A stretch of 64,000 nt of DNA from IMG/VR virus record IMGVR_UViG_3300023175_000005, positions 192,559-256,558 of that record, one strand, 5' to 3'. Made by a program: the position numbers and the translations under genes. Positions 12,415-64,000 of this stretch are shown here, one piece after another. The stretch's first letter is position 1. Every line of letters begins with the position of its first letter. The notes under the pieces were generated by a model that was not told the origin of the DNA, did no database searches, and worked only from the letters and a program-made list of their open reading frames with translations.

Positions 12415-12443
12415 AATATAACACACAAACACCCAAATGTCAA
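12415..12443 (-). promoter_or_regulatory. sigma70-like promoter
   Basis: TTGACA-N17-TATATT. Confidence 0.65.
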
Positions 12444-13675
12444 TCTTTTAAAAAACCAAATTCAGGATAAAGATCTAAGAATTTTGTTGCTCTTGTACTG
12501 TCAAAATAATCCAACATGTATCTAAAATAATCACGTTGTTTATCTGATAAAGTTTTTTGTGGCTCCGTTTTAATCCAATCTAACCAGTTGTAGTCGTCTA
12601 TTAGGTTTAAAGTTTTTAACTCTGGTAAGAAAGTTTCAATTTTTTTTACAATTTCAATTCTGTAATCAATGGGTGAGTTGGCAAAATGTAATGGCTCTGG
12701 CCAATCTAAAAATGTTGTATTAAAAGGAAACTTATTTTGTTTAATAAAGTCAAGCAAATTTGGCAAATCTTTTAGATTTAGCAATTGTATTGTAGGCTCT
12801 AAGGTAATTTGAAAATTCTCATATTGGTCGCATATTTTTTTAGATCTTAAAATCTTGCTTTCCAATGCAGACCAAGAACTAGGGTATCGAACATATTCTA
12901 AAACTTTTCCAGTAGCATCCAAACTTATTGATAAGTTTACATGCTTAAACTTTGTAAGGTATTTTTCTATCCATGATTCTTTGATAATTGTGCCATTTGA
13001 AATTATGTGTACCTTTATATGACCGCTTTCTTTTCTATTCACTAATTCTTCTATCAAAGATGTAAATCCCTTCATCACAAACGGCTCGCCGCCGACTGCC
13101 ATAATCTCTTGAGTTCTTTTTGCATTTTCAAGTATATGGTCAACAAATCGCTGGTTGAAATTATTAGATGATGTAGAAAGAACTTCTAGGTCTTTACTAT
13201 TGGTATAAGGATTGCTTTTGCCGAATTTATTATATTCTAGCATGTTCTTTGCAATTTGATTGCTCAATGTAGGGTTACACATCACGCACTGCAAGTTACA
13301 TTCGTTGCTCATTCTCAAATCAAAACTCAGAGGACTAGGAACAACTGTATGGGCATTTTTATAATAATAATCGGCTAATGATTTCCATTTATGATTTTCA
13401 TACTGTCGGTTTGAAATGATTCCCTGTTCTTCACTTTCAATACAACTTTTACAGATATTTTTAGGGATGATTCTTTGATTGAATTTGTGTCTTAATTTTT
13501 GTAAAGTCTTGCTGTTCCATACTTCATCGACATCCTTGCCTAGAATATTAATATCGTCTGAATCTAATTGTTTTGCATAACAACAGGCTTTCATATGCCC
13601 TGTTGTTGTCACAAACATTTTAACAAAAGGATGGACACAAAAATTTTTGTATAAATCTTCTATTTCATTCGTCAT
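12440..13675 (-). CDS. radical SAM protein with N-terminal SPASM/twitch-like domain
   Basis: CNLQCVMC and GGEP; N-terminal FCVHPF..ACC..CKSC. Confidence 0.88.
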   Translation of the reverse strand: MTNEIEDLYKNFCVHPFVKMFVTTTGHMKACCYAKQLDSDDINILGKDVDEVWNSKTLQKLRHKFNQRIIPKNICKSCIESEEQGIISNRQYENHKWKSLADYYYKNAHTVVPSPLSFDLRMSNECNLQCVMCNPTLSNQIAKNMLEYNKFGKSNPYTNSKDLEVLSTSSNNFNQRFVDHILENAKRTQEIMAVGGEPFVMKGFTSLIEELVNRKESGHIKVHIISNGTIIKESWIEKYLTKFKHVNLSISLDATGKVLEYVRYPSSWSALESKILRSKKICDQYENFQITLEPTIQLLNLKDLPNLLDFIKQNKFPFNTTFLDWPEPLHFANSPIDYRIEIVKKIETFLPELKTLNLIDDYNWLDWIKTEPQKTLSDKQRDYFRYMLDYFDSTRATKFLDLYPEFGFLKD

Positions 13676-14140: not shown

Positions 14141-15034
14141 TTATGTTCCCCAGGCATTTCCGAATAGGCTAATGTGGAGTCTTGGAGTGAACCTCCAGCC
14201 TCGTTCCATACAGAGCTTCGCCACCTCTTGTACCGTGATGTTGTACCCTTCCGAGCGACCGCCAAGCGGCATAAGATAGACAGGGCATTCCACACCCGCT
14301 GAACGATATTCACTAACTGCTCTACTAACTTCATCAACATCATCCATATCAGCAACAACAAATTTAAGATACACAGAACTGCTGTCACAACGAGCGTAAT
14401 CACGCAAGACGTCAGGTTTGATAGCTGAATCCCAAGTTTCTCCGCTGACGGATAACTTAGGAGAACAACTAAATGTCCATTCAATTCTGTCATTGTTGTT
14501 GATGTAATTGAACAAATCATCATGTAAAAATTGTGTAGTGTTTGTTTCAAACGTGACATTTTTTAAATCTTTCATTTTCGGATGTTCAAACAACTCTACG
14601 TAGAGTCGTTGCCATGCAAGTAATGGTTCACCGCCTGTCATAATCAAATGAATATCTTGTCCATTATCTTGTGTCCATTTGCCTTCCGGCAATAAACTAA
14701 TCAAATGATCTACAACTTCGTCTACTTCTGCAAGTTTGTTAAAGTGTTTAAACTCTGGATAGATACTAGCATATGTATCACAACCTGTGTGAATAATAGG
14801 TAAATCTTCAAATTTTTCTGTAGTTTCGTGTACGCCTGCGTCAAGTAGTGCCTTTACTTCTGGATTGTAACGATTGCCTTCTGCGTGTTGTTCCCAACGA
14901 TTCTTGTCTTTTGGTAAGCCAAAATTCATACAACGAAAGTTGCAACCAAATGTACGTAAAAATACGCTAGGTACTCCTACGTATTTACCCTCACCTTGTA
15001 CACTATAAAATGCTTCACTGTAACGTAATTTCAT
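14141..15034 (-). CDS. queE: 7-carboxy-7-deazaguanine synthase (radical SAM)
   Basis: SEAFYSVQGEG, FLRTFGCNFRC...CDT, TGGEP, ETN, SPKL, RLH. Confidence 0.92.
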   Translation of the reverse strand: MKLRYSEAFYSVQGEGKYVGVPSVFLRTFGCNFRCMNFGLPKDKNRWEQHAEGNRYNPEVKALLDAGVHETTEKFEDLPIIHTGCDTYASIYPEFKHFNKLAEVDEVVDHLISLLPEGKWTQDNGQDIHLIMTGGEPLLAWQRLYVELFEHPKMKDLKNVTFETNTTQFLHDDLFNYINNNDRIEWTFSCSPKLSVSGETWDSAIKPDVLRDYARCDSSSVYLKFVVADMDDVDEVSRAVSEYRSAGVECPVYLMPLGGRSEGYNITVQEVAKLCMERGWRFTPRLHISLFGNAWGT

Positions 15035-15653: not shown

Positions 15654-15760
15654 TCTGCTTTTGCCTTGATAAATCTTTCTGCTAGATCGTATTTAAGTTG
15701 CAGATTAAAAATGGTTGTAGTGTTATAAGGTTGTGTAAAAGAATAATTAATTTCAAACAT
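15641..15760 (-). CDS. small hypothetical protein (39 aa)
   Basis: Hand translation MFEINYSF...EWQG; TAATG overlap with the folE stop; fills the gap. Confidence 0.45.
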   Translation of the reverse strand: MFEINYSFTQPYNTTTIFNLQLKYDLAERFIKAKAEWQG

Positions 15761-16443
15761 TAGCAAGCAAATTCCTGTTGTAGTTTGATGTTGTCAAAGA
15801 ACTCTTTCTTAGTTGTAGGATCATCTTTAAAACTACCTCTTAGCACAGTTGTTTGTGTAAGTGAACTATGTGCCATAATTCCGCGATTCTCGCAGCAGCC
15901 GTGTGTTGCTTGAATGTATACACCTAAGTGCTCGGCACCTGTCGCTTTTTGAATCTCACGTGCAATATCATTTGCAAGTTCTTCTTGCAGTGTGCCGCGT
16001 CTTGCACACCACTGTGCAATTCGTGTATATTTAGAAAGACCAATTAATTTTTCAGCAGCAATAATACCAATGTATGCAGTGCCAACAACAGGCTGGTGAT
16101 GATGTGAACACATTGATTTAAGTTCACTGCGTACTACTAGCATACCTTCATAACGGTCTTCCGAATCATTTGGAAATGCTGTTGCATCAGGCTTAGGATC
16201 ATAACGTCCTGCCATAATTTCATTTATATACATTTTTGCTAGACGTCTGCCTGTATCCTTTGAATTAGGATCATTTACAATGTCAATACAAAGACTTTCA
16301 AGAACGCTTTCGAACTTAGGTGTAAGTTCTTCTATAAGGGCTTCTTTGTCACCTTTTTGCATAACATATGATATGTTATCGCCAGCCCAGTAACGTTTAC
16401 CAGCATCTTCTAATCGTTGTTTTAGTTCTAAACTTTTTGTCAT
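15760..16443 (-). CDS. folE: GTP cyclohydrolase I
   Basis: SMCSHH, IGLSK..R, LQE, HGC...RG motifs. Confidence 0.95.
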   Translation of the reverse strand: MTKSLELKQRLEDAGKRYWAGDNISYVMQKGDKEALIEELTPKFESVLESLCIDIVNDPNSKDTGRRLAKMYINEIMAGRYDPKPDATAFPNDSEDRYEGMLVVRSELKSMCSHHHQPVVGTAYIGIIAAEKLIGLSKYTRIAQWCARRGTLQEELANDIAREIQKATGAEHLGVYIQATHGCCENRGIMAHSSLTQTTVLRGSFKDDPTTKKEFFDNIKLQQEFAC

Positions 16444-16511: not shown

Positions 16512-16759
16512 GATATTTCTTCAATATCTGTTACATCACTAAAAGGAACTACACGTTTGATAAATTGTTTCTCAGCATCTTTAATTTCGTACAGTTCTCT
16601 TTTGCTATCTTGAGATAATAGAACACCTTCTCTTTCTAGTTCGACATATGCATTAACCGGAAGATCTGCCATGCTATACATTCCACCAAGTCTGCCAAAT
16701 TTGTCTACAGGCCATTCTGCTTTATACTTGCATTTATATTCTTTATATTCAGTACTCAC
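16508..16759 (-). CDS. hypothetical protein
   Basis: 83 aa ORF in operon. Confidence 0.65.
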   Translation of the reverse strand: MSTEYKEYKCKYKAEWPVDKFGRLGGMYSMADLPVNAYVELEREGVLLSQDSKRELYEIKDAEKQFIKRVVPFSDVTDIEEIS

Positions 16760-17348
16760 TTACATTCTCCCAAGGATAAACTAACCAAACATCTTCTTCT
16801 GCTTTATTGATTTCGTGTGCGTAATAACGAACTAATCCGCAGTCACTTGCTAAATTTTCAGTTAAAGTTGCGAAACGAACGTTTTGGTCCCAAACTCTGT
16901 TCCATCGATCATGATCGGGTAAACAACCACTAGTCCAGTCTTTTACAATCCAGTTAAATGTTGTACCAGTGTCGTTAATATCGTCTACAATAAGAATATT
17001 ACTTTTGTTTTCAATAGTAATAATATCAACACCTGCACTTGCTTGAATGTCTTGATTATGAGTTTGAATTTTCATATCTTCATATCCAAATGCATCTTCT
17101 GCCATCCAACAGTTGCTTTCGTTTCCGTAACCTTCATTGTCATCACGCAAACTAACCTTTAGTGCTTCGCAACGAATACCAGTCATGTTAGAAATAATAG
17201 TTGCAGGAATGTTACCACCTCGTGTAATACCTACAATGTAATCAGGACGCCAATTATCTTTATACATCTGCATGACAATACTTGCACACATCTTTTCTAC
17301 GTCTTGCCACGAATAATAATGTTTCTTAATCATTCTTTTTCCACTCAT
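16749..17348 (-). CDS. type I phosphoribosyltransferase (xanthine/guanine PRT-like)
   Basis: IVGITRGG, PRPP-binding ILIVDDINDTGTT, C-terminal WLVYPWE typical of Gpt-like enzymes. Confidence 0.88.
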   Translation of the reverse strand: MSGKRMIKKHYYSWQDVEKMCASIVMQMYKDNWRPDYIVGITRGGNIPATIISNMTGIRCEALKVSLRDDNEGYGNESNCWMAEDAFGYEDMKIQTHNQDIQASAGVDIITIENKSNILIVDDINDTGTTFNWIVKDWTSGCLPDHDRWNRVWDQNVRFATLTENLASDCGLVRYYAHEINKAEEDVWLVYPWENVSEY

Positions 17349-17553: not shown

Positions 17554-17969
17554 TAAAATGGTACCTCTGCTTCTGGTTCGTGATTACCTTTATAGTCTTG
17601 ATGAACCATTTTGTAAATTGATTCAAAGTTTTTAAAAGCTTTTTCTAAACCGGGATAATGTTGACACATATCTTTAATTTTATTTAATGAAGGCATTGTA
17701 TCTACAAATTCAGTTTGTTCCCAAGTAATATTGTCACTCCAGTGTGTATCATCAATTGTGATGGTTAAATTACCATCACTAATAGTACTGGCATTATTAA
17801 TATTAATGTCTGATATATTAAATGTTAAATCTTCGTCAGAAATAATGTCTATAGTTGCTGTTGTGATATCACTTATACTAGTTGAATATGTGTGGTCTGT
17901 ACTTGTACCAAAAATAATATCATCATCATTACCCATCTGCAATATTCCTGTATAGTTCGGTTCCGTCAA
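17553..17969 (-). CDS. hypothetical protein (Thr/Ile/Asp-rich N-terminus)
   Basis: ORF in operon; C-terminal MC..YPGL.KAF..F motif. Confidence 0.65.
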   Translation of the reverse strand: MTEPNYTGILQMGNDDDIIFGTSTDHTYSTSISDITTATIDIISDEDLTFNISDININNASTISDGNLTITIDDTHWSDNITWEQTEFVDTMPSLNKIKDMCQHYPGLEKAFKNFESIYKMVHQDYKGNHEPEAEVPF

Positions 17970-18987
17970 AAAATTCTTTGTTAAGTTTAGTGCGCTGTTT
18001 TTCTAAACTTATAAGATAGTCATCGTAGTTTTCCATATAGTCAACAATCTTGGCAGCAATGTCTCCTCTATGTTTTCTATATGCACTATAATCTTCAGTC
18101 CATTGACTAGGATATTTAAATTCGGGCAATGCCATTTCTGAATAACTTAATCTATCAGGTACCATAGGAATAGCATCTACTAGAGCGCCTTCGTACCAAC
18201 TGATACCTAGTGTTTCTTGTAAGTTAGCACTAAACACAAGTTTTGCTTCTCCTAACAAGTTGTGATATTCATTTTTAGTAAGCGTTTGCTCTTGACATAC
18301 AACAAATTCATATTCGGGTAGTTGTTGTTTTAAATCATGGAATATATCAACTTGTTTTTCTGGAGCAATACGATGCGGGAAAAGAATTAGATCACGCTTC
18401 TCCATACCTTTGTATTGATCTAAACTGCTACGTAAATATTCCATAGGCCAACCTACACGATGTGTTTTATCTATATCAACTTGATAATCTTCACCTAATG
18501 TATCTGCAAACATTTCAATATGAAAGTCAGTTGCAAAAAAGTTATCATCATAACATTCAAACATTGACATTTCAGCATGTCTTACCCAGGGCTTATCTCC
18601 AATCAACCTGCCAAGAAAGTCATGAGGGTCATAACTACCAGCATGCCAAAGCCCGCCGATGCTAACATCAACGTCCAAGAGTTCTGCCATATAACGTAAC
18701 TGAATAACAGTAGGGTTCCAAGCATCGGTATATAAGAAATAATCTCCATTTTGAATTTGCCCTTTACAAAACATTTCGCCTATGATTTCTAGTTGTTTTG
18801 ATTTGTAAACATTGGTTCCGCCAAAATTGAGAAATGCCCCAGGCGTTGTTGCCTGAGGCGTCTCGCCACCACTGATGACTTTTACATTTTCGTTTGTAGA
18901 TCGTGATAGTTGCTTTGGAAGGTAATCTTTCCATTGCTTAGTGTAGCGTGTATCAACTGCTTCAATATCTACAATATAAATTGTCAT
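17929..18987 (-). CDS. GT-B retaining glycosyltransferase, GT4/GTDC1(QTMAN)-like
   Basis: FPHRIAPEK; Y..LL.EA.LVFS..LQETLGIS.YEG (E-x7-E); P.VPDRLSYSE. Confidence 0.8.
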   Translation of the reverse strand: MTIYIVDIEAVDTRYTKQWKDYLPKQLSRSTNENVKVISGGETPQATTPGAFLNFGGTNVYKSKQLEIIGEMFCKGQIQNGDYFLYTDAWNPTVIQLRYMAELLDVDVSIGGLWHAGSYDPHDFLGRLIGDKPWVRHAEMSMFECYDDNFFATDFHIEMFADTLGEDYQVDIDKTHRVGWPMEYLRSSLDQYKGMEKRDLILFPHRIAPEKQVDIFHDLKQQLPEYEFVVCQEQTLTKNEYHNLLGEAKLVFSANLQETLGISWYEGALVDAIPMVPDRLSYSEMALPEFKYPSQWTEDYSAYRKHRGDIAAKIVDYMENYDDYLISLEKQRTKLNKEFFDGTELYRNIADG

Positions 18988-19199
18988 TAATGTCTCCGAT
19001 TGTTAAAACTTCGACTTGCGTTACGTGACTTAGCACGTAAATAATTTTGATATTTAATATAAGATTGCCAAATAGGCGCATCTTTTTTATACAAATCAGC
19101 CTCGTTAAAGACTTTACCTTCAAAGCGACAATAGTCGCGGAACTTATCCAAATCATTAAACACTTTTGTATAAGCGTCACGATTGAACTTAATAGTCAT
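18987..19199 (-). CDS. hypothetical protein
   Basis: 70 aa; TAATG-coupled to the glycosyltransferase. Confidence 0.7.
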   Translation of the reverse strand: MTIKFNRDAYTKVFNDLDKFRDYCRFEGKVFNEADLYKKDAPIWQSYIKYQNYLRAKSRNASRSFNNRRH

Positions 19200-19217: not shown

Positions 19218-19685
19218 CTATGGGTAAACAATTTGACAGCCATTTTCGCCATCTTCGGCGACATCAATAACAACAAAGCGGCCGGGATACTTTGCGTTAA
19301 TCTGTGTGTACAAGTCATCTGCGATCATTTCGCACGACTTGTGATTTAGTTCAATAACCTTGTCGTCATAAAGACTTTCTAGCCAACGCTTGAACTGAAT
19401 AAATTCAATGTCACGATCATTATGTGTAACTTGAATTTGTACCTTAAAATGAAAGATGTGTCTATGAGCCACACCTAAAAAACTTACGTCATCCCAGCCA
19501 CCTGTTGCTAGTGCTGGATCGTCTTTTGCCGCAGGATAAAGATGGATACCTTCTTTACGGAATGTTACCCAAATACTACGTTTTGCATTTTCTAATCTGT
19601 GTGAAATACTCAATTTTTTATCTTCCTGTCGCATTTTCCAAAGCATCCAATCATAATAACGCTTAGGTTCTTTGTCTCTACTCAT
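19218..19685 (-). CDS. QueD-like T-fold protein, DpdL type (predicted CDG decarboxylase family)
   Basis: LGVAHRHIF (LxxxHRHxF) in place of QueD CxxxHGH; SCE and EDGENG motifs; lies in the que/dpdA cluster. Confidence 0.75.
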   Translation of the reverse strand: MSRDKEPKRYYDWMLWKMRQEDKKLSISHRLENAKRSIWVTFRKEGIHLYPAAKDDPALATGGWDDVSFLGVAHRHIFHFKVQIQVTHNDRDIEFIQFKRWLESLYDDKVIELNHKSCEMIADDLYTQINAKYPGRFVVIDVAEDGENGCQIVYP

Positions 19686-20250
19686 TTACTATAGTACCAT
19701 TTTCAATACTTGTCAACTCGATAATTTCATCAGATCCATAATTAGACCAGTCAGTAAATTTTTTCCTATCCATTAAGTCGTGTAAACTATGACACCAAAC
19801 ACCTGGATTAGTTGCCTTAAAATCTTTATCATCAATTTTCAACATAGTGTTATAATTCCATAGTTTGATATATGGAATAGGAACTCTTAGTTGCGGAATA
19901 AAATTTTCGTATTCTGTTAAACCACTTTCTAGAAATGCTTCTGCAAGTGCAATAGGAATATCTAAACTGCAATAATAGTCTTCATTTAGACAATCCTTGA
20001 TCATTGATTCCCACCATTCCCAGTCTTCATCTGTATCAGGATTAAAACTATGATTAGCACCAAAAAACAAATGCTTAATTTTATTCAAATTAGCAATGCC
20101 CTTGATTTCTTCTAAAGGCTGTTTGCCTGTAATAAACAAAGTTTTTAAACCAAATGCAGGTGTACGTTCTACTTCGTTACCAATGAAGTAAACAGCATCA
20201 TCTGCTGAACCTGTAGCATAATCTCTATTCATTAATATTGAGCCTCCCAT
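19678..20250 (-). CDS. hypothetical protein in deazaguanine cluster (probable start 20232)
   Basis: G.EVE.TPA.G..TLF, FFGANHSF and NPGVW motifs; overlaps the start of the QueD-like gene. Confidence 0.75.
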   Translation of the reverse strand: MGGSILMNRDYATGSADDAVYFIGNEVERTPAFGLKTLFITGKQPLEEIKGIANLNKIKHLFFGANHSFNPDTDEDWEWWESMIKDCLNEDYYCSLDIPIALAEAFLESGLTEYENFIPQLRVPIPYIKLWNYNTMLKIDDKDFKATNPGVWCHSLHDLMDRKKFTDWSNYGSDEIIELTSIENGTIVNE

Positions 20251-20600
20251 TCGTTGCCGCCGTTACCATATTGAAGAACTTCTACTTTTTTAACACGATC
20301 ATATCTAAAACTTCTAAAACCGTTTGATTCAATAGCCCATACAACAACATTTTTTTCATGTTTTTGTGTTGTATCTTTCTTTGGGTCTGGAAAGAAAGAC
20401 GGCATAAGAGTACAAGGCATCACTCTTTCAGTGCCGTCTAATTTGTTAAAAGTTACTTCAACTACTTCTTTTTCTAATAGCGCAACTAATTCATCTTTTG
20501 TAGGAATACCCTTTAGGGCTGCTACTGTTTCTTCAACTTTTGCCATTTTTAACCTTATACATCTCGTTCCAAATGTCCCAACGTTTTTTATTGTACTCAT
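20232..20600 (-). CDS. WYL_2/DUF2693-like SH3-fold protein (start may be 20546)
   Basis: VTF.K.DG.ER.M.CTL...FRSFR.D pattern typical of T4-like phages. Confidence 0.7.
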   Translation of the reverse strand: MSTIKNVGTFGTRCIRLKMAKVEETVAALKGIPTKDELVALLEKEVVEVTFNKLDGTERVMPCTLMPSFFPDPKKDTTQKHEKNVVVWAIESNGFRSFRYDRVKKVEVLQYGNGGNEWEAQY

Positions 20601-20686: not shown

Positions 20687-20875
20687 CTAAGTTCTTTTTC
20701 CGAGCGCAATGATATTCTCCAGTCTGTGTATTTCGTCTTTATACCAAAGTTTTTTTGTTTTTAATTTCCTAATTGCGTCATCTACAATGTATGATTTTTC
20801 AAGTTCAATAATTTCTTCATCTAGTTTTCTGTGCTTTCTTTTCAGTTCGACTAAATGTTCTTCATGTCCCATCAT
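20687..20875 (-). CDS. DUF465/YdcH-like coiled-coil protein
   Basis: L...H..LD.EI..LE...I..LK..KL..KDEI. Confidence 0.7.
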   Translation of the reverse strand: MMGHEEHLVELKRKHRKLDEEIIELEKSYIVDDAIRKLKTKKLWYKDEIHRLENIIALGKRT

Positions 20876-22332
20876 TACAATTCCTCGAATAGATTGTTAA
20901 ATTGCGTTTGAGCATTTACAATACGCTTGCCTGTATTGCCTCTAGTACCTATAATACTATCCCAGTATCTAGAAAATTCTAAAATGACAGCCTCGGCTTT
21001 TTGTCTGTCATCAGTTTCAAAAATTGCATCAACAACATCTCTAAACGCAATTCTATCAAATTTTTCTTGTATCAACATATTAGGAATAATACCTGCGTCA
21101 TATTGACGGTTTGCTTCTTGTACAGCATTAATGTGCATCCATACATTGTGACCCATCATAATTGCATACGAGAAACTATCCCATGAAGTTTTTCCTTCTT
21201 TACCGATCTTATTTAGATCGCCCGGACCGTATATACAAATTTCTTTTGCTTGTAGTCCTGTTGTTATAGGCGAATCTAAGAAACTAGGATGTTTTCCTTC
21301 TCTAACAAAAGCTTGTCCAAAAGCAGTTGTATCATTTGCAAGTGCTTTGTCGTCGATACTAGGTACCATTCTATATACCCACTTGCTTCTATCTTCTGTT
21401 TCTAGTTCACAGTAAATCTGTCCATTAGCAGTTGCAAGGAAAGGCGAAGCACAATCAAATGTAATAGTAAAGTTTTCGTTATGATATTTGCGCACTGCTC
21501 TTTGAATGTCAGTGAGCAGTGTAGCCCACTCTAGTTTTGAAGTTCCTAAGAAGTGCATGAAATCATGTTTGCCTTTTTCAAGCAATCCGTCAAAACGTAA
21601 CGCAACAACACGTTTAAGTGCTAGGTGTACATCGCACATATTTTGTCCACCCATTGACCATCCGTTGAAATGATCTTCATATTTTTTAGGATCACAGTAG
21701 TCTTTCATTTGATCGTACCAGTCATCTGCGTCTGCATGATTCTCGCCTTGTAGTACGTTCAAAAACTTACAAGCACCTGTACGATGCTTCATCCAGTAGT
21801 CATTATTAATACGTGTTGCTTTAACTGCTTCTTGGTAAGTTGAAATGCCAGTTGCTTTTGCACCTGCAGGCGAACGTGCAACCCATGCCGGAATATCAAG
21901 GATCATACCGTAGTCCATATAAGCATCCATCCAACGCAGTACGCCATCACGTTTCTTTTGTGCCTTTGGACAGTTTGGATCTTTCCAGTCACCTTCCCAA
22001 ACACCCTTACCAATCTGGAAGCCACCTGAGTCGCCAAGTAGCCAAGTGTTTGCTCTGTCTCTGTTACGCACCATATCTTCCTTAGGTGCATGTTTTGTAG
22101 TATCTAAGTCAGCATGTCCTGCTGAGTATAATGTCCACTTATATTGAAACTGTCCTTGATCTTTATTTAGATAGTTAAGACTTTCAACACCATTATTTAA
22201 ATTACTAGGTATTCTAGCAGGGTCGACATAGTTTTCAAAACGCTGTTTGCCTACGTAAGTAGCATAAAAGCCACTCAACGCGGGCAGAAAAACAGCATAG
22301 TCATTTTGTGTTGCAGTTAAATTTGTATTCAT
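20875..22332 (-). CDS. dpdA: DNA 7-deazaguanine transglycosylase (TGT/DpdA family)
   Basis: DSGGFQ, MILDIP, VLQG, HFLG and FDCASP TGT motifs; lies with folE and queE. Confidence 0.85.
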   Translation of the reverse strand: MNTNLTATQNDYAVFLPALSGFYATYVGKQRFENYVDPARIPSNLNNGVESLNYLNKDQGQFQYKWTLYSAGHADLDTTKHAPKEDMVRNRDRANTWLLGDSGGFQIGKGVWEGDWKDPNCPKAQKKRDGVLRWMDAYMDYGMILDIPAWVARSPAGAKATGISTYQEAVKATRINNDYWMKHRTGACKFLNVLQGENHADADDWYDQMKDYCDPKKYEDHFNGWSMGGQNMCDVHLALKRVVALRFDGLLEKGKHDFMHFLGTSKLEWATLLTDIQRAVRKYHNENFTITFDCASPFLATANGQIYCELETEDRSKWVYRMVPSIDDKALANDTTAFGQAFVREGKHPSFLDSPITTGLQAKEICIYGPGDLNKIGKEGKTSWDSFSYAIMMGHNVWMHINAVQEANRQYDAGIIPNMLIQEKFDRIAFRDVVDAIFETDDRQKAEAVILEFSRYWDSIIGTRGNTGKRIVNAQTQFNNLFEEL

Positions 22333-23060
22333 TATTTACTTTGTGCTGGCAGGATATAGTCATACTTGGCCATACCACTGTCTACTGTAATCATCATAGC
22401 ACCTTGATCTGTGATGCTAATTTTCTTATCGCCATCTAGCCCTAAAATAGAAATAGTTTGCGCAACTGGCCATGCCCAAGTATGTTGTAAGTTTCCGCCA
22501 ACATCATGTTGGAATGTAAACTTACCCGCATGTGTATTCAAGTCACCAAAGTAAAAATTAAGATTTCCATCTTCTGTCTTAACTTGGAATACAGGTTCTT
22601 CTGAATGAGCACCGGCCATTAGTTTCATACGTGCAATTGCTGCAACACTTGGTTGAAATTCTACATCCCATGTGCTACCTTTAAATTTTACACTTTTTAG
22701 TTTTTCTTCAATAATCGCTTTGTTCATAAAGCGATAATCATTTTGGAAGTCTCCACCTTCATTTTCAAAATGAATGTGTGTTGGAATAGTTTCACCATTC
22801 CGATCTTCTTGCACTACGTCAATTTTTGCTTTATCTTGATATTCTGGGTTCTTCAAATGATATGCAAGTTTGTTAAGATCTGGCATACCAAATGTACCTA
22901 CAAATTCTGACACTGGCGAATGTGTTGTAGCACTAAGTACAACACTTCTATCTTCCGCCATACTTTCAATACTTGTCTCTTGTTCTGCTACAACTTTTAA
23001 TGTTGTAATAAAGCCGAGACTATGTGTGTGCGACACAACATCTTGTAAGATATCTTTCAT
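22332..23060 (-). CDS. putative DNA polymerase sliding clamp
   Basis: 242 aa, clamp-like size and beta/alpha pattern ending YDYILPA; PolB and clamp loader in the window. Confidence 0.55.
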   Translation of the reverse strand: MKDILQDVVSHTHSLGFITTLKVVAEQETSIESMAEDRSVVLSATTHSPVSEFVGTFGMPDLNKLAYHLKNPEYQDKAKIDVVQEDRNGETIPTHIHFENEGGDFQNDYRFMNKAIIEEKLKSVKFKGSTWDVEFQPSVAAIARMKLMAGAHSEEPVFQVKTEDGNLNFYFGDLNTHAGKFTFQHDVGGNLQHTWAWPVAQTISILGLDGDKKISITDQGAMMITVDSGMAKYDYILPAQSK

Positions 23061-23833
23061 ACTGTTTCTCCATTGTTAAGTTCTATTATATTGCCTAGTG
23101 TGTTGTTTGTCAATAGTTTTTCTATCGAGTATTTAGGTTTAAAGCCTAATGTTTTAATTTTTTCCATATTTGCACAAGTCCATTGTCTTTCATTTGGGGT
23201 ATTTAGACGGATGGGCAAATCTTCTGCAAAGTCACGGACACGAAAAGGATGTCCTGTACCTATATCAATTTCTCCTTTATACTTGCTATTCATGCACAAT
23301 TCTATTGCATCACATACATCTTCAATATGTATAAAATCTCTATAATGATTTGTAACATATTCAAGTTCTCCGTCTAGATACTTTTGCATAAACATTCCTT
23401 TGCGTGGAATATCTGAATACACTGTATGAAATCTCATGCATAGTGTATTTGAATAACATGATGCTGCTTCTTCTACAATATATTTGCTGGCTGCATATGG
23501 ATTTAGATGTGGTTCATATGCTGAACTAGAACTTGCAATCAACATACGTGTATCTGGATAGCGTTCTAAAAGTCTTTTGGTAACTTCTACATTATTTTGC
23601 CAATAGCCTGCAGGATCATTCATTGATTCACGAACACCACTTTTTCCTGCTAGGTGTATAATTAAATCAAATTCTTCTTTCAATTCACAAGTTGTCAGAT
23701 CTTGACTGTTGTTAAGTTTGTCTCTATCCCAACCGTCCTTAAGATCAAACCCTACAACACTATGTTTTTTTGTAAGTCTTTTTAGTAAATGACTTCCAAT
23801 AAAGCCTCTATGGCCTGTTAACATAACTTTCAT
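23057..23833 (-). CDS. NAD-dependent sugar epimerase/dehydratase (extended SDR)
   Basis: TGHRGFIG, HLAG, SSS, YAASK, RDFIH. Confidence 0.92.
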   Translation of the reverse strand: MKVMLTGHRGFIGSHLLKRLTKKHSVVGFDLKDGWDRDKLNNSQDLTTCELKEEFDLIIHLAGKSGVRESMNDPAGYWQNNVEVTKRLLERYPDTRMLIASSSSAYEPHLNPYAASKYIVEEAASCYSNTLCMRFHTVYSDIPRKGMFMQKYLDGELEYVTNHYRDFIHIEDVCDAIELCMNSKYKGEIDIGTGHPFRVRDFAEDLPIRLNTPNERQWTCANMEKIKTLGFKPKYSIEKLLTNNTLGNIIELNNGETV

Positions 23834-24524
23834 TTAAGATCTCCATTGTATCCTTCCAGTCTTTGACATGATAGGATTTACCATTGCCTCTTTTGGCAAT
23901 TGCAGTTGATAATGGTTCGTCATTACCACCAGGTTCTTGTTTATCGCCAAAAAAGATTAGTTTGTCATGGTCGTTAAAATCATTAATAATTTGTGATTTG
24001 TCACAACCTGTAGGATAGATATCAATACCTGTTTCTCCTCCTACTTTTGCTGTAATGTTTTCAAATTCTGTGTTAATTTGATAAGCAATACTTTCACGTT
24101 CTCTACTTTCGAGATCGTGTTTAATATATAATTTACGTTCGCCTAGTGTGCAATTACGCCCTACAATTGAAAAGTTTACACAACCTGGACGTACTTCGAT
24201 ATGGTTTCCTGTGCGTAAAGGAAAATTACTTGCTTGTAGCCATCCATTCATTAAATCCATAAGTTCTTTTGGTGCCGTCCAGTCGTTAGTTTTTACATTT
24301 ACACCGTGACTCCAAACATCATTACCAGAACAATTATAAACAACTTTTGCTGTGTTAAACAAAACATTTCCAATTTGTTCAACTGTTTTATCTTTGTCAC
24401 TACCGGTAATCAGATAAACATCGTTAGTTGTTACAAAATCAAAAAAGAATTTGTTAAACTCAGGATCAATAGTTTGTCTACTAGGAGTTAGTGTTCCGTC
24501 GACATCAAAAATAAACTTATTCAT
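23808..24524 (-). CDS. phosphomannomutase, HAD-IIB (eukaryote-type PMM family)
   Basis: FDVDGTLT..R, TGSD, IE.R...NFS..GR, GG..G.DI.P.G.DK, FFGDK..PGGND. Confidence 0.85.
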   Translation of the reverse strand: MNKFIFDVDGTLTPSRQTIDPEFNKFFFDFVTTNDVYLITGSDKDKTVEQIGNVLFNTAKVVYNCSGNDVWSHGVNVKTNDWTAPKELMDLMNGWLQASNFPLRTGNHIEVRPGCVNFSIVGRNCTLGERKLYIKHDLESRERESIAYQINTEFENITAKVGGETGIDIYPTGCDKSQIINDFNDHDKLIFFGDKQEPGGNDEPLSTAIAKRGNGKSYHVKDWKDTMEILNESYVNRP

Positions 24525-24678
24525 TTATGCATACCGCCTTTTCTCCTTCTGTAAACAATGCTTCAAGAACTGCTGCATTTATACTGCATTGCTGCTGTGT
24601 ATTATACTCGTTAAATTTTGTAACTTTATATTCATCAATATCTACAAGTGAACTAATTATCAATAGTGTCCACATCAT
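24517..24678 (-). CDS. small hypothetical protein (53 aa)
   Basis: Hand translation MMWTLLIISS...AVCINE; GAGG SD; overlaps the PMM start. Confidence 0.55.
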   Translation of the reverse strand: MMWTLLIISSLVDIDEYKVTKFNEYNTQQQCSINAAVLEALFTEGEKAVCINE

Positions 24679-24808
24679 CTTTTTCCTCTCTTATTATAAA
24701 GTGTACTTTTACAATACCTTTCTTTTCTTTTTTGATATAAAATTCTAACCCATTCTCTATAAAAATTTTTCTAAGTTCATTAAGTGTTGGATCGGTATCT
24801 CGTATCAT
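24653..24808 (-). CDS. small hypothetical protein (51 aa)
   Basis: Hand translation MIRDTDPTLNELRK...; fills the gap. Confidence 0.5.
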   Translation of the reverse strand: MIRDTDPTLNELRKIFIENGLEFYIKKEKKGIVKVHFIIREEKDDVDTIDN

Positions 24809-24820
24809 CCTTGTTGCGCC

Positions 24821-25249
24821 TTATGCATTTGATTCCCTTTCGCATACTCGTTTTCTTAAATCGCTGCTTGAGAAGCGGTGATCTCTTTTGTTGAAATGTA
24901 GCTGGATACCCCGCTTCTTGCAAATATCCTTGCCAGTAAAATCCTTTTCACGATACTCTTCACCTAGTATTCTAACATCAATATGATACATTGTCAAGAT
25001 ATCTTCTAGGTCCTGTTCAGTTGCATAAGGAATTATTTCATCTACATAACTCACTCCTTTGAGTTGTGTATAACGTTCCACTATAGTTTGTACAGGTGGA
25101 TTCTTCTCTGGCCTATCTACACTGGGATCCATTTGCAATCCGCATATAAGATAGTCACATTGTTCTTTTGCTTCACGTAGCATTTGTACATGTCCTGCAT
25201 GTAACAAATCAAATGTTGAACAAGTAAATCCTACTTTCATTCGTACCAA
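24821..25249 (-). CDS. cytidylyltransferase (TagD/glycerol-3-phosphate CTase-like)
   Basis: TFDLLHAGH; R.H.FSSS.LR. Confidence 0.9.
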   Translation of the reverse strand: MVRMKVGFTCSTFDLLHAGHVQMLREAKEQCDYLICGLQMDPSVDRPEKNPPVQTIVERYTQLKGVSYVDEIIPYATEQDLEDILTMYHIDVRILGEEYREKDFTGKDICKKRGIQLHFNKRDHRFSSSDLRKRVCERESNA

Positions 25250-25741: not shown

Positions 25742-26030
25742 TTAATAAAGTACTCCATTTTTTTAATTTTTCACGTTTTTTGTTGGAACGTTCAGCAACT
25801 TCAACATGAGTAACAATTCCATGATCAATCATAAGTTCGATCATACACTGCACATCGCCAATTTCTTCCATCAATTTAACACGCTGATCTTCTTCAATTA
25901 ATTTAGTTGTAGCGTATTTCCGCATAATCTTACTACAACGTTGTGTAAGTTCTCCACATTCTTCCATAGTAATTGTCATTAGTTGTTGTAATTTGTTAAT
26001 AGGACTTTCCATATTATACTCCAAATTCAA
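25734..26030 (-). CDS. MazG-like NTP pyrophosphohydrolase
   Basis: EECGEL...EEIGDV. Confidence 0.75.
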   Translation of the reverse strand: MNLEYNMESPINKLQQLMTITMEECGELTQRCSKIMRKYATTKLIEEDQRVKLMEEIGDVQCMIELMIDHGIVTHVEVAERSNKKREKLKKWSTLLNE

Positions 26031-29816: not shown

Positions 29817-30683
29817 CTAACATAGTATTTTATTCAATCTGTTTTGTTGTATATGTTTAATTTCATTTTCCGGCATTCTAGCAATGACATCCAAATAAAA
29901 TTGCGGAACAAGTGATTTATTTTTAATAATGTTATATACTAAATTTTTATTGTAGTCAATCTCTTTTTGATCAATTTCTTTAGGAAAATTTTCAATACTT
30001 TCTATAAAAAGATCAACCCTGTTGTCAACATCTTCGTCATATCTATAATCTACTCCAGTGTATGGTTTGAATCCTAGAGATTGTAAAAATTTATTGAATC
30101 CTGGTGCAGCAAATGTAATGAAAGGTTTGCTACAAAGTAAAGGTCTAACGGTCTTTTCTGTAATAAAAATTCTCTCTACAGATGTTTCTAATACAACATC
30201 AAATCTTGATCTTAAATATTGCATAGGTAAACTATATTGCTTATCGATATCTGTCCATCCTTTATGAAAAGTTAGAAATGCATTATTATGCAAATTTTTA
30301 CTTTTTATTTTGTCTATAATTTCGATTCTATGTGGCCTTGCTATATTATTCATGCAAGCAAAATTATATTTTATTGGTTGTTTAGAAATTCTATCTACCA
30401 ATCGATAGGCTGTGTAATTAAACCAATATGTTGGCCAATAGTATATATTCATATTTTTTATAGGATATAATTTTGTATAATCGTACCCAGGTGCAGATCC
30501 TAATACAATATATACTTCTATGTTATTATCATTAATTATTTGGCAACAGTTTTTATATTCTAACCAACATTGATCCTCATGTTGGGCAAATATTACAATA
30601 TGCTTTGGCAACTTTTTATTGTTAAGTAGGTATACAATCCTATCAATATCAAAGTCGTGCCAAACATCAAAAAACCATGTCAA
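29817..30683 (-). CDS. putative glycosyltransferase-like protein (paralogue of 6713-7624)
   Basis: N...RPHR; VVLETS...FITEKT.RPL...KPF...L.SLGFK.Y...YD. Confidence 0.5.
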   Translation of the reverse strand: MTWFFDVWHDFDIDRIVYLLNNKKLPKHIVIFAQHEDQCWLEYKNCCQIINDNNIEVYIVLGSAPGYDYTKLYPIKNMNIYYWPTYWFNYTAYRLVDRISKQPIKYNFACMNNIARPHRIEIIDKIKSKNLHNNAFLTFHKGWTDIDKQYSLPMQYLRSRFDVVLETSVERIFITEKTVRPLLCSKPFITFAAPGFNKFLQSLGFKPYTGVDYRYDEDVDNRVDLFIESIENFPKEIDQKEIDYNKNLVYNIIKNKSLVPQFYLDVIARMPENEIKHIQQNRLNKILC

Positions 30684-31836
30684 TACAAGTACCTCTGAAT
30701 TTATCTAAATGTTTTTGGTAACTCATGCCTTGTTCAAAGTGTTTTATATTACGTTCTCGAGTAACTGCCGGTAAGCTTCTTTTAAGATCTTTATACACAT
30801 CGCATAAGTCTATATAAATTTGTTTATGATCATCAGGTGCATGACACGGTGCAAATTCTTTAGGACTGTTCACAGGATAAACTTCCCATCTTTCAAAATT
30901 ATTTGACATAATCCATTCACCTAGTGATTCCATATGTTTTACGTTAATCCAACTTACAGTTGTACAGACATCACTTGTACCAATTTGTTGTGCTTTTGCA
31001 ATGTTTTTTATAATTTTATCCCAATTGCTAGGATACCTAATATATTCATTTATTTCTTTATAACCGTCAATGCTAAAATGCCACTCCACATCAAATTTTT
31101 CTAAAATTGAAAGTAGTTTAGTGGGTAAATTGTTTCCGTTTGTAGTTATACGTAAACTAGGTTTGCTATCATATACTAAAAGATATTCGCAAAACTTTTG
31201 AAGGTAATTGTTTACAGTTGGTTCTCCACCTGTGAAACGTATTTCATCTCTATCGTGTAAAAATTCAGCAAGTTTTTGTAAATTGTTTTCGTCTTCATAC
31301 CATACATCAAACGAATACTTGTGTCTTTGTATTAGTTTATGTTGTATACCTTGGCTATCTAGTTTTGTAAGTTCTGCATCTATAAGACTGCTGTTCACAG
31401 GACCGCACATTGAACACGAAAGATTACATTTGTTTCCAAATTTTATTTCAGCGTCTTTACGATTGTTTCTATACTTTCTTTCGCTTTGCAATCGTAAACT
31501 TTCAAAGCCGTAAGATTCTTCTTCTTTACAATCTCTACATCCTTCGGGAAATATTCCATTATCAAGATCTTTCTTAACACTTGCTAAAAAGTCACTGTCT
31601 TTGTATTTTTCAATATCTGAAACTTTTACAAGATCTTTTCTGTCGCGGTCGTCCCAATTACAGCAAGGGCGTAAATTACCCAAAGTATCCATGCTGATGT
31701 GATTATCTAGCCATTTACACTTCTTCGGAGAGTTCGAAGAGTTTGTCAATTTCTCTGACTTTTCCACAGGATTTTCCGCACTGGACCCAGCATTGACTGA
31801 TTGATTTTGATTGCCAACTGTCTGAATAAACTGCAA
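30667..31836 (-). CDS. radical SAM protein with N-terminal SPASM/twitch-like domain (probable TTG start near 31750)
   Basis: CNLSCSMC and GGEP; C.W...RPCC...CRDC. Confidence 0.85.
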   Translation of the reverse strand: MQFIQTVGNQNQSVNAGSSAENPVEKSEKLTNSSNSPKKCKWLDNHISMDTLGNLRPCCNWDDRDRKDLVKVSDIEKYKDSDFLASVKKDLDNGIFPEGCRDCKEEESYGFESLRLQSERKYRNNRKDAEIKFGNKCNLSCSMCGPVNSSLIDAELTKLDSQGIQHKLIQRHKYSFDVWYEDENNLQKLAEFLHDRDEIRFTGGEPTVNNYLQKFCEYLLVYDSKPSLRITTNGNNLPTKLLSILEKFDVEWHFSIDGYKEINEYIRYPSNWDKIIKNIAKAQQIGTSDVCTTVSWINVKHMESLGEWIMSNNFERWEVYPVNSPKEFAPCHAPDDHKQIYIDLCDVYKDLKRSLPAVTRERNIKHFEQGMSYQKHLDKFRGTCIDMVF

Positions 31837-52711: not shown

Positions 52712-52881
52712 CCCGTTATTTCTCCTTTTAAATTAGAAAGTCTTTGACTCAAGAAACTTATTGTTGTGTTAATGTGTCCTGTGTCATGGGGTTGTAGTAA
52801 TGTTTTGTAATATTCTATTTCTTCTTCTAGTACGTTTATACGTACAATATCATTTATCAGTTTTTTATTTTTAGTCACCAC
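52696..52881 (-). CDS. hypothetical protein
   Basis: 61 aa; overlaps its neighbours. Confidence 0.6.
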
Positions 52882-55608: not shown

Positions 55609-55609
55609 T

Positions 55610-56946: not shown

Positions 56947-56947
56947 A

Positions 56948-63393: not shown

Positions 63394-64000
63394 TTATCCG
63401 CGTCTGCGTGTCCTTACACGAGGATACATCAATCCCGTTGTAGGGCGATTGTTTACATCCTTATTGTACGTGTTAAACGCCATATTACCTGATGTTTGCC
63501 TGTGATTTTTCCACAGCACAATCCTGTCAATGTCAGAACCATCAAGGCTGACCTTTGTGTCGGTATTCACCAATACAGCATTTTGTTTTGGTGCTGAACT
63601 CTTGTAAGGATGATCTGAAGGTAGACTGCCTGTTAGAGCCCACTTGTGAGCAAGGTATCCTTCAATGCGTTCTACGTGGCTTACATCTGTGCTGCCTGTT
63701 CCGGGCAGTCCAGCAAACGTCAAAAACTCTGCCATTTGACCACTCATGTGTTCGTTGGCTCTGTTGCGGAAGAATCGCAAATCCATATTGGTGTTTAGGG
63801 CATTGTCGTAGTCATTCACAGGAGTAAAAGCATTGGTTCCATTTACCCTTACAGCAATCTGGTTGCCTGTTTTGTTGAATATGGCACACACTATGACCCA
63901 AGCGCCCTGTCCTATGCCTGAGTCGAAGTCCTGTTTGTTTCCTATGGTTGATGAAATCCTGTTGCTAACCAATCCATCTAGGTCCAACTCACCGTCGAAC
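63394..64000 (-). CDS. C-terminal part of a virion protein with LamG/ConA-like domain (5' end outside window)
   Basis: Frame open to the window edge; G..AE....G...IEGYLAHKW.L...LP.DHPYK motif. Confidence 0.65.
   Translation of the reverse strand, partial: FDGELDLDGLVSNRISSTIGNKQDFDSGIGQGAWVIVCAIFNKTGNQIAVRVNGTNAFTPVNDYDNALNTNMDLRFFRNRANEHMSGQMAEFLTFAGLPGTGSTDVSHVERIEGYLAHKWALTGSLPSDHPYKSSAPKQNAVLVNTDTKVSLDGSDIDRIVLWKNHRQTSGNMAFNTYNKDVNNRPTTGLMYPRVRTRRRG

What the first reader, a model, noticed from the sequence alone, without database searches (positions are those of the whole stretch)
19218..19685. HRH-type QueD paralogue with no canonical QueD or QueC nearby
Seen: LGVAHRHIF replaces the CxxxHGH of QueD, so that catalytic Cys is missing, but an SCE motif remains. 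As I recall, LxxxHRHxF marks DpdL, a predicted and not biochemically proven CDG decarboxylase giving dDG. It is the only QueD-like T-fold protein in the cluster. It either does the QueD step itself or acts after QueE with host QueD supplying CPH4. Its product defines the substrate for DpdA and the GT.
Basis: partly seen in the sequence, partly recalled or inferred. Interest (0 to 1): 0.6.

Follow-up and report, generated by a model that had tools for sequence, protein, structure and literature searches.

The report
DpdL gene; QueD lies off-contig
This gene is a clear member of the already described phage DpdL family (a QueD-like protein predicted, not proven, to make 7-deazaguanine for DNA modification), and the missing ordinary QueD is best explained by the assembly stopping about 15 kb short of it.

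Summary
The ORF at 19218-19685 (minus strand, 155 aa) is real and carries LGVAHRHIF and SCE. It is a DpdL: 51% identical to ACP17 DpdL and 33% to phiST DpdL, the founding members. It has the published LxxxHRHxF signature, and a confident model (pLDDT 94) matches PTPS/QueD T-fold structures. It lacks QueD's catalytic Cys and Asp-His dyad but keeps the HxH metal site and the substrate-anchoring Glu motifs.

The reading that it must do the QueD step, or rely on host QueD, is not supported. The window is the last 64 kb of a 256.5 kb viral contig that is about 72% complete. The contig ends at a hypervariable cassette where many assemblies break. Strains 96-99.8% identical to the window's end carry a canonical QueD 9-15 kb beyond that point. 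So do all three more distant relatives whose contigs reach far enough. At least 11 of 12 complete DpdL-bearing phage genomes have one too, often 50-220 kb from DpdL.

No standard QueC was found, although a divergent QueC-like PP-loop gene lies about 25 kb away. The locus also encodes FolE, QueE, a TGT-fold DpdA-like protein that Pfam misses (20875-22332), a probable GT4-like transferase and a purine phosphoribosyltransferase. This is a new member of a known, biochemically unproven family.

The parts
19218..19685 (-). DpdL: QueD-like T-fold protein of 155 aa with LxxxHRHxF (70-78), SCE (117-119), EDGENG (144-149) and an N-terminal helix (about residues 10-33)
19678..20250 (-). 190-aa ORF of unknown function whose end overlaps the DpdL start by 8 nt; homologue of ACP17 gp122 and conserved in the related viral contigs
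   Evidence: no Pfam, NCBIfam or PHROG match
18987..19199 (-). small 70-aa ORF between DpdL and the GT-like gene, conserved in relatives at 44-62% identity
17929..18987 (-). probable GT4-like (GT-B) glycosyltransferase of 352 aa; orthologue of ACP17 gp124, PA5oct gp167 and the Phosso 'glycosyltransferase'; conserved near DpdL in six of twelve phages
   Evidence: invariant E258-x7-E266; the window protein itself has no Pfam hit, and its profile finds no PDB sequence
20875..22332 (-). DpdA-like transglycosylase of 485 aa with a TGT fold; invariant GDSGGFQ (100-106) and FDCASP (292-297); orthologue of PA5oct gp168
   Evidence: Pfam TGT gives no hit
16749..17348 (-). purine (xanthine/guanine-type) phosphoribosyltransferase of 199 aa
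   Evidence: a homologue sits in the FolE/QueD/QueE/DpdL cluster of Synechococcus phage BUCT-ZZ01
15760..16443 (-). FolE, GTP cyclohydrolase I
   Evidence: (PF01227 E 1e-39)
14141..15034 (-). QueE-like radical SAM protein (CDG synthase family)
   Evidence: (phrog_2076 E 1e-49)
63397..64000 (-). 3' part of the first gene of a hypervariable cassette. Related strains lose similarity to the window exactly at 63396/63397, and many assemblies end here. The phage's canonical QueD lies beyond it, outside the record.

Best explanation
The ORF is a bona fide member of the phage DpdL family. It has a QueD-derived T-fold, keeps the metal-binding His residues (H48, H74, H76) and the Glu motifs that anchor a 2-amino-4-oxo-pyrimidine ring, and has lost QueD's catalytic Cys (now Leu70) and Asp-His dyad. 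It belongs to a phage-encoded 7-deazaguanine DNA-modification pathway. In that pathway FolE (15760-16443) makes H2NTP from GTP. A canonical phage QueD, encoded roughly 9-15 kb beyond the end of this contig, makes CPH4. QueE (14141-15034) makes CDG. DpdL most likely acts on CDG; the published prediction is metal-assisted decarboxylation to 7-deazaguanine. The TGT-fold DpdA-like protein (20875-22332) would then exchange the base into DNA. Shown here: family membership, fold, motif pattern, pathway context, and the presence of QueD in near-identical strains and in all informative relatives. Inferred: the decarboxylase chemistry, the order of steps, and that this exact strain carries QueD in its unassembled part.
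For: Membership: 51% identity to ACP17 DpdL and 33% to phiST DpdL. The motif LxxxHRHxF is conserved across 45 diverse homologues, as published. Fold: pLDDT 94, with top Foldseek hits P. horikoshii PTPS 2dj6 and E. coli QueD 4ntk (E 4e-5, probability 1.0, target TM about 0.70). Catalytic pattern: Leu70 aligns with the QueD Cys, the FDH dyad is not conserved, and the HxH and Glu motifs are kept. Context: FolE and QueE are in the window and the 485-aa ORF has a TGT fold. In 12 complete DpdL-bearing phages FolE is 12/12, QueE 12/12, QueD 11/12 above cut-off, and QueC 0/12 in the cluster. QueD beyond the contig end: the window is colinear with three relatives up to its last gene, and their QueD lies 13-32 kb further on. 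Only these 3 of 28 relatives reach more than 50 kb upstream of DpdL, and all 3 have QueD; the other 25 reach 33 kb or less and have none. Contig L121 (96% identical to window 59236-63396, with the identical 238-aa protein) has a PF01242 gene 9.2 kb upstream. Contig L120 (99.84% identical over window 52646-63397) overlaps L137 at 99.47%, and L137 carries a 166-aa PTPS with CNTIHGY. Five further contigs with a related cassette have QueD 6-8 kb upstream.
Against: No contig bridges the window's own variant of the cassette to a QueD. The two same-strain contigs (L122 at 99.98%, and L143) stop at the same place, so QueD in this exact strain is inferred. The QueD alleles in L121 and L137 are only 41% identical, so the region is mosaic and gene loss in some strains cannot be excluded. 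DpdL's decarboxylase activity has never been shown, and the one reported heterologous test was negative. Phages of this type also carry a GT-like gene next to DpdL that dDG-containing phiST lacks, so the final product here may not be plain dDG. The Pfam PTPS model does not detect the protein, and sequence-profile links to QueD are marginal (E 0.1; hhalign 49%).
Confidence: 0.6

Rival explanations
1. DpdL is part of the deazaguanine pathway but is not a simple CDG decarboxylase. It may perform different metal-dependent chemistry on CDG, CPH4 or a pterin, giving a base that is then inserted and further decorated by the adjacent GT-like enzyme. Alternatively it may be a non-catalytic T-fold partner of QueD, QueE or DpdA.
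For: The activity is unproven and the published heterologous test was negative. A GT4-like gene lies next to or near DpdL in the window, Phosso, PA5oct, ACP17, BUDD, BCSR5 and BUCT-ZZ01, but not in phiST, where dDG was measured. Sugar-nucleotide genes lie close by at 23057-25249. Nearly invariant R75, C118, D145 and E147 have no assigned role. Fusions to a Vut_1/YhhQ-type domain and to a PAPS-reductase-type domain exist.
Against: phiST, which carries DpdL plus FolE, QueD, QueE and DpdA3 and has no QueC, contains dDG with complete replacement of G, and decarboxylation of CDG is the one step left without an enzyme. The metal site and ring-anchoring residues are conserved as expected for an enzyme.
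Confidence: 0.28
2. The phage truly lacks QueD, and host QueD supplies CPH4 between phage FolE and phage QueE.
For: No PF01242 match and no phage-QueD-like frame anywhere in the 256.5 kb held. The QueD region is mosaic between strains.
Against: The record is about 72% complete and ends at an assembly breakpoint. Strains 96-99.8% identical at the flank, plus every relative whose contig reaches the site, have QueD. At least 11 of 12 complete DpdL phages encode their own QueD.
Confidence: 0.07
3. The HRH-type protein itself performs the QueD step (H2NTP to CPH4) and replaces the canonical QueD.
For: It has the QueD fold with the HxH metal site, and it is the only such protein in the record.
Against: Leu replaces the catalytic Cys that QueD needs for activity (as stated in PMC10516641), and the Asp-His dyad is also lost. 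DpdL coexists with a canonical QueD in at least 11 of 12 complete phages and in this phage's near-identical strains, which argues against redundancy.
Confidence: 0.03

Closest known systems
DpdL (Cellulophaga phage phiST CGPG_00067; Acidovorax phage ACP17 gp125), predicted 7-carboxy-7-deazaguanine decarboxylase, Hutinet et al. 2023 NAR (PMC10516641)
   Same: Same signature LxxxHRHxF, the same conserved His and Glu residues, QueD-like T-fold, 33-51% identity, and the same gene company (FolE, QueE, a QueD elsewhere, a DpdA-type protein, no standard QueC).
   Different: It carries an N-terminal extension of about 35 residues predicted as a helix, which is absent from phiST DpdL. It is paired with a different, larger TGT-fold protein (485 aa, PA5oct gp168 type) in place of DpdA3. 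It is also accompanied by a GT4-like protein and a phosphoribosyltransferase. It comes from an abundant, apparently marine group of phages with genomes of roughly 350 kb.
QueD / PTPS-III, 6-carboxy-5,6,7,8-tetrahydropterin synthase (PF01242; E. coli QueD, PDB 4ntk)
   Same: T-fold, HxH metal ligands, the (S/G/T)-(C/S)-E substrate-anchor motif and the C-terminal Glu.
   Different: There is no Pfam match. Catalytic Cys is replaced by Leu, the Asp-His dyad is lost, Arg is inserted between the two His, and an EDxENG motif is present.
Pseudomonas phage PA5oct gp166-gp168 and Sinorhizobium phage Phosso gp222-224 modules (all annotated hypothetical or 'glycosyltransferase')
   Same: Orthologous DpdL (54-67% identity), adjacent GT-like gene (44-49%) and, in PA5oct, the orthologous 485-aa TGT-fold gene (36%). 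QueD lies far away in the same genome: 55 kb in PA5oct and 220 kb in Phosso.
   Different: Different hosts and genome backbones. No DNA-modification chemistry for these phages came up in the papers searched.

Membership tests
DpdL | Signature motif LxxxHRHxF in place of QueD's CxxxHGH | tested here: met
   L70-G-V-A-H74-R75-H76-I-F78; these positions are invariant or >=90% conserved in 45 homologues; the motif definition was read in PMC10516641
DpdL | Significant sequence similarity to the founding members (phiST CGPG_00067, ACP17 gp125) | tested here: met
   tblastn 33% identity, E 4e-15, and 51% identity, E 8e-37; phrog_17812 E 2.7e-34
DpdL | QueD-like T-fold | tested here: met
   AF2 pLDDT 94; Foldseek top hits are PTPS/QueD, probability 1.0, target TM about 0.70
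DpdL | Genome also encodes FolE, QueE and a DpdA-type transglycosylase | tested here: met
   FolE; QueE; TGT-fold 485-aa ORF with both Asp motifs
DpdL | Genome also encodes a canonical QueD | tested here: inconclusive
   Absent from the 256.5 kb held. Present just beyond the contig end in strains 96-99.8% identical at the flank and in 3 of 3 relatives that reach the site. The exact strain is not bridged.
DpdL | No QueC in the genome | tested here: inconclusive
   There is no standard QueC. A divergent PP-loop ORF at record 185,973-186,716 scores 22.2 bits against a cut-off of 22 over QueC's C-terminal part, has no NCBIfam QueC hit, and is absent from the other DpdL phages. The record is incomplete.
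DpdL | CDG decarboxylase activity giving 7-deazaguanine | not testable with these tools
   This is only predicted in the literature, and the reported heterologous test was negative
QueD (PF01242, CPH4 synthase) | Match to the family model above its curated cut-off | tested here: not met
   No PF01242 hit even at E 1; no NCBIfam QueD hit
QueD (PF01242, CPH4 synthase) | Catalytic Cys of CxxxHG[HY] and the Asp-His dyad | tested here: not met
   Leu70 aligns with the Cys; the FDH of phage QueDs aligns with non-conserved residues
QueD (PF01242, CPH4 synthase) | HxH metal ligands and Glu substrate anchor on a T-fold | tested here: met
DpdA / TGT superfamily (for the 485-aa neighbour at 20875-22332) | TGT TIM-barrel fold with the DSGGxQ and xDC/xD catalytic Asp motifs | tested here: met
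   The top 50 Foldseek hits are all Z. mobilis TGT, E about 4e-8; GDSGGFQ and FDCASP are invariant in 21 orthologues; an atlas neighbour cluster carries PF01702. That these two motifs are TGT's catalytic Asp motifs rests on my knowledge of the TGT literature.
DpdA / TGT superfamily (for the 485-aa neighbour at 20875-22332) | Match to Pfam TGT, or to a named DpdA subfamily (DpdA1-4) | tested here: not met
   No PF01702 hit. No similarity to phiST DpdA3 by BLAST or iterated HMM. hhalign to the DpdA3 group and to the BUDD/ACP17 gp123 group gives low probability, though the motifs align.

The most novel reading that the evidence does not exclude
In this abundant group of roughly 350 kb phages, and in PA5oct-like and Phosso-like phages, DpdL works with a previously unclassified DpdA subfamily, an adjacent GT4-like transferase, a purine phosphoribosyltransferase and nearby sugar-nucleotide genes. 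Together they would make a 7-deazaguanine derivative that is not plain dDG, for example a further decorated (possibly glycosylated) base. In that case DpdL's chemistry would be something other than simple decarboxylation.
Probability: 0.15. Interest if true: 0.7.

Novelty: new member of a known kind. Interest (0 to 1): 0.3.

Why it matters
DpdL is the one enzyme still missing proof in the route to 7-deazaguanine DNA, a modification that replaces every G and blocks many restriction enzymes. A phage in which DpdL stood alone without QueD would have hinted that DpdL can make CPH4 or has a broader role. This work shows that the hint is an assembly artefact, so the published picture (QueD plus DpdL, no QueC) stands.

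Three results are useful beyond that. The family is very large: 2025 clusters at 50% identity. In large phages its QueD partner is often tens to hundreds of kb away, so searches limited to the neighbourhood will miss it. DpdL also comes in at least two kinds of module: with DpdA3, or with a larger TGT-fold protein plus a GT-like gene. The second kind, which includes PA5oct, has no DNA chemistry in the papers searched here.

Tried and rejected
- **Pfam and NCBIfam on DpdL:** no PTPS/QueD hit.
- **DpdL profile against PDB sequences:** only a marginal PTPS hit, 2dj6 at E 0.099.
- **Local hhalign of the DpdL alignment against a small phage-QueD alignment:** 49% probability, C-terminal half only. 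The link to QueD therefore rests on the fold search and on the published HHpred result.
- **Megablast of the locus against annotated phages:** no match.
- **A possible orthologous QueD site inside the record:** G020's QueD neighbours match record 21.5-22.9 kb. They turned out to be a KdsA/KdsB sugar cassette, which is not a positional marker, and there is no QueD beside them.
- **Bridging the window's own cassette variant to QueD:** the same-strain contigs L122, L143 and L149 all start or stop at the breakpoint. I ran no further search on this.
- **Profiles of the GT-like protein and of the 485-aa protein against PDB sequences:** nothing.
- **Searching the QueC-like PP-loop protein in 12 DpdL phages:** no homologue, so I rejected it as part of the DpdL module.
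- **Supplementary tables of PMC10516641:** not held, so I could not look up which ACP17 gene the authors call dpdA.
- **Literature after 2023:** no biochemical follow-up on DpdL in the library.

Full report
**What is at the coordinates.** An ATG-to-stop ORF of 155 aa lies on the minus strand at exactly 19218-19685. Pfam and NCBIfam give no PTPS/QueD match. PHROGs gives phrog_17812, function unknown, at E 2.7e-34.

Hutinet et al. 2023 (PMC10516641) named phiST CGPG_00067 'DpdL'. They describe the change of QueD's CxxxHGH to LxxxHRHxF and propose alkaline, metal-assisted decarboxylation of CDG to 7-deazaguanine. They also report that expressing dpdL and dpdA of phiST and ACP17 in E. coli gave no dDG. 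The window protein is 51% identical to ACP17 gp125 (E 8e-37) and 33% identical to phiST CGPG_00067 (E 4e-15).

**Family and fold.**
- The family is large. The exhaustive search found 2025 representative clusters at E<=0.001.
- In a 45-sequence alignment H76, F78, S117 and E119 are invariant. H48, L70, H74, R75, R91, E94, F95, C118, E144, D145, E147 and G149 are at least 90% conserved.
- The AlphaFold model is confident (pLDDT 94). It shows an N-terminal helix at about residues 10-33, followed by a beta-beta-alpha-alpha-beta-beta T-fold.
- All top Foldseek hits are PTPS/QueD structures: 2dj6, 4ntk, 3qn9 and 2oba, with E down to 4e-5, probability 1.0 and target TM about 0.70.
- A joint alignment with phage QueDs places Leu70 on the catalytic Cys and H74/H76 on HG[HY]. 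E94-F95 falls on the QueD D-F, SCE on the GCE of phage QueDs, and E144 on the C-terminal Glu. The QueD F-D-H dyad has no conserved counterpart.
- So DpdL keeps the metal site and the ring-anchoring residues and loses the Cys-Asp-His machinery. The SCE motif is the shared substrate anchor, not a leftover catalytic Cys.

**The surroundings.** The window is phage DNA: family B polymerase, exonuclease, many radical SAM genes. It is the last 64 kb of a 256,558-bp IMG/VR viral contig estimated at 72% complete. The genes around DpdL, all on the minus strand, are:

| Coordinates | Gene | Evidence |
|---|---|---|
| 14141-15034 | QueE-like radical SAM | phrog_2076 E 1e-49, |
| 15760-16443 | FolE | PF01227 E 1e-39, |
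| 16749-17348 | xanthine/guanine-type phosphoribosyltransferase | |
| 17929-18987 | 352-aa GT-like protein | |
| 19218-19685 | DpdL | see above |
| 19678-20250 | 190-aa ORF homologous to ACP17 gp122 | |
| 20232-20600 | WYL_2 protein | |
| 20875-22332 | 485-aa DpdA-like protein | |
| 22332-23060 | probable sliding clamp | |
| 23057-25249 | sugar-nucleotide genes | |
| 26014-28710 | family B DNA polymerase | |

- **The 485-aa protein** has no Pfam hit, but its model (pLDDT 83) matches tRNA-guanine transglycosylase in all 50 top Foldseek hits (E about 4e-8). Its orthologues keep GDSGGFQ and FDCASP invariant. From my knowledge of the TGT literature, these correspond to the two catalytic Asp motifs of TGT. 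An atlas neighbour cluster carries PF01702. It is the DpdA-type enzyme of this locus, and its orthologue is PA5oct gp168.
- **The 352-aa protein** is orthologous to ACP17 gp124, PA5oct gp167 and Phosso's annotated glycosyltransferase. Those orthologues give weak GT4 hits (E 1e-3 to 3e-4). The family has an invariant E258-x7-E266. A GT-B transferase is likely but not established.

**The central question: is QueD really missing?**
- Inside the record it is. PF01242 finds nothing. phiST and ACP17 QueD find nothing. A profile of eleven phage QueDs, run without filters over all six frames, has the DpdL ORF itself as its best hit at E 0.11.
- Three independent lines show this is an effect of the contig end.
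- **Line 1, complete phages.** In 12 complete phage genomes that carry DpdL, QueD is above Pfam's cut-off in 11. The twelfth, D479, scores below it but has the same CQNIAHGH motif as Ahp1. QueD is often far from DpdL: about 55 kb in PA5oct, 220 kb in Phosso and 100 kb in BUDD. FolE and QueE are 12/12.
- **Line 2, related viral contigs.** I tested 28 related IMG/VR contigs (DpdL 62-91% identical), all fragments of genomes of roughly 350 kb. Only three extend more than 50 kb upstream of DpdL. All three have QueD there, 53-66 kb from DpdL. The other 25 reach 33 kb or less and have none. Protein-level synteny is colinear from window 16.7 kb to 63.4 kb in all three. Their QueD lies 13, 18 and 32 kb beyond the point that corresponds to the window's end. 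The window's record has only 44 kb on that side.
- **Line 3, near-identical strains.** Other assemblies encode the identical 238-aa protein of window 62646-63362. L122 is the same virus (99.98% identity up to base 64000) but adds only 432 nt. L120 is 99.84% identical over window 52646-63397. L121 and L123 are 96-98.8% identical.
- All of these lose similarity to the window at 63396/63397. A cassette of giant, unrelated ORFs (1920-2125 aa, one with a T4 gp9/10-like domain) begins there, and many assemblies end there.
- On the far side of that cassette, L121 has a 158-aa PF01242 gene 9.2 kb from the 238-aa gene. L137 overlaps the L120 contig at 99.47% over 3.6 kb and has a 166-aa PTPS with CNTIHGY.
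- Five more contigs with a related cassette gene show QueD 6-8 kb upstream.
- No part of L137 matches the held record, so the region really is absent from the record.
- I could not bridge the window's own cassette variant. QueD in this exact strain is therefore inferred, though strongly.

**QueC.**
- No standard QueC is present.
- A 247-aa ORF at record 185,973-186,716, about 6 kb before the window start, has a PP-loop (SGGPDS) and a C-terminal Cys cluster. It scores 22.2 bits against PF06508 (cut-off 22) and has no NCBIfam QueC hit. Its atlas neighbours are viral QueC-domain clusters.
- It sits between two radical SAM genes and has no homologue in the 12 DpdL phages. Ten of those 12 have no QueC-like match at all.
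- I treat it as unrelated to the DpdL module, but it is a caveat to 'no QueC'.

**Most likely mechanism.**
- Shown: the phage encodes FolE, QueE, DpdL and a TGT-fold transglycosylase. Its population encodes QueD.
- Inferred: GTP is converted to H2NTP (FolE), then CPH4 (QueD), then CDG (QueE). DpdL then acts on CDG, and the DpdA-like enzyme inserts the product into DNA.
- Decarboxylation to 7-deazaguanine is the best available assignment. In phiST the same gene set without QueC yields dDG replacing all G, and DpdL keeps a metal site and purine/pterin anchor while lacking QueD's own catalytic residues. It remains unproven.
- The conserved Arg75 between the two His is a candidate ligand for the 7-carboxylate (inference).
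- The phosphoribosyltransferase could recycle guanine released by base exchange into GMP, and hence GTP for FolE. It could also make a deazapurine nucleotide. Both ideas are speculation.
- DpdL comes with three different kinds of TGT-like partner. One is DpdA3 (phiST, MA9V-3, D479, Ahp1, RHph_I1_18). One is the BUDD/BUCT-ZZ01/ACP17 gp123 group. The third is the window/PA5oct group.
- The GT-like gene accompanies DpdL in Phosso, PA5oct, ACP17, BUDD, BCSR5 and BUCT-ZZ01, none of which has the DpdA3-type partner. That leaves room for a different end product in these phages.

**Verdict.** The interesting part of the interpretation, a DpdL standing in for QueD or depending on host QueD, is not supported. 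This is a new member of a known, still biochemically unproven family, in a well conserved but split pathway. Interest is modest. The residual novelty lies in the unclassified DpdA-like partner and the GT-like neighbour, not in the QueD question.

Noticed in passing
window 20875-22332 (-): A 485-aa protein with no Pfam, NCBIfam or PHROG hit has a confident TGT fold and invariant GDSGGFQ and FDCASP motifs. It looks like a DpdA subfamily distinct from DpdA3 and from the BUDD/ACP17 gp123 group. Its orthologue in PA5oct (gp168) is annotated hypothetical.
   Followed up: yes
window 17929-18987 (-): A 352-aa probable GT4-like transferase (invariant E-x7-E) lies next to or near DpdL in this clade and in Phosso, PA5oct, ACP17, BUDD, BCSR5 and BUCT-ZZ01. 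It is absent from phiST-type DpdL modules. Its substrate is unknown.
   Followed up: partly
window 16749-17348 (-): A xanthine/guanine-type phosphoribosyltransferase sits inside the deazaguanine cluster, and a homologue sits in the same cluster of Synechococcus phage BUCT-ZZ01. It might salvage guanine released by base exchange, or it might make a deazapurine nucleotide.
   Followed up: partly
record G000:C1:185973-186716 (L001:970-1713), about 6 kb before the window start: A divergent QueC-like PP-loop protein of 247 aa (SGGPDS plus a C-terminal Cys cluster; PF06508 22.2 bits against a cut-off of 22) lies between two radical SAM genes. It has no homologue in the other DpdL phages.
   Followed up: partly
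window 63397-64000 and beyond (L120, L121, L122, L134): A hypervariable cassette of giant ORFs (1920-2125 aa, one with a T4 gp9/10-like domain; probably baseplate or fibre genes) starts exactly at window 63396/63397. Strains 96-99.98% identical on one side carry unrelated genes here, and many independent assemblies break at this point.
   Followed up: yes
L121:322-798 and L137:3047-3547: The canonical QueD genes of two strains whose flanks are 96-99.8% identical to the window are only 41% identical to each other. Each sits next to a GT-A-like gene and UvdE. QueD therefore lies in a mosaic region.
   Followed up: partly
window 12440-13675, 30667-31836, 31715-32836; L001:45-950 and 1682-2617: There are many paralogous radical SAM genes, several of the twitch-domain type (NF033640, up to 278 bits), with no assigned role.
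   Followed up: no
window 23057-25249 (-); record 21486-22926: Sugar-nucleotide genes (an epimerase/dehydratase, a phosphomannomutase-like protein, a small cytidylyltransferase-like protein) lie next to the DNA-modification cluster. A KdsA/KdsB pair lies near the start of the record.
   Followed up: partly
proteins P0199 and P0202 (metagenomic DpdL homologues): DpdL occurs fused to a Vut_1/YhhQ-type domain (the family of the preQ0/preQ1 transporter, from my own knowledge) and to a PAPS-reductase-type PP-loop domain. BUDD also has a PAPS-reductase-family gene in its cluster.
   Followed up: no
window 19581-19685 (residues 1-35 of DpdL): An N-terminal extension predicted as a long helix is conserved in the marine relatives and in PA5oct. 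A 25-residue stretch of it matches a separate small region in Methylophilales phage Melnitz at 68% identity. PA5oct's annotated CDS starts downstream of the region that aligns.
   Followed up: no
window 19678-20250 (-): A 190-aa ORF overlaps the DpdL start by 8 nt. It is homologous to ACP17 gp122, is conserved in relatives at 46-58% identity, and has no family match. It could be another pathway component.
   Followed up: partly
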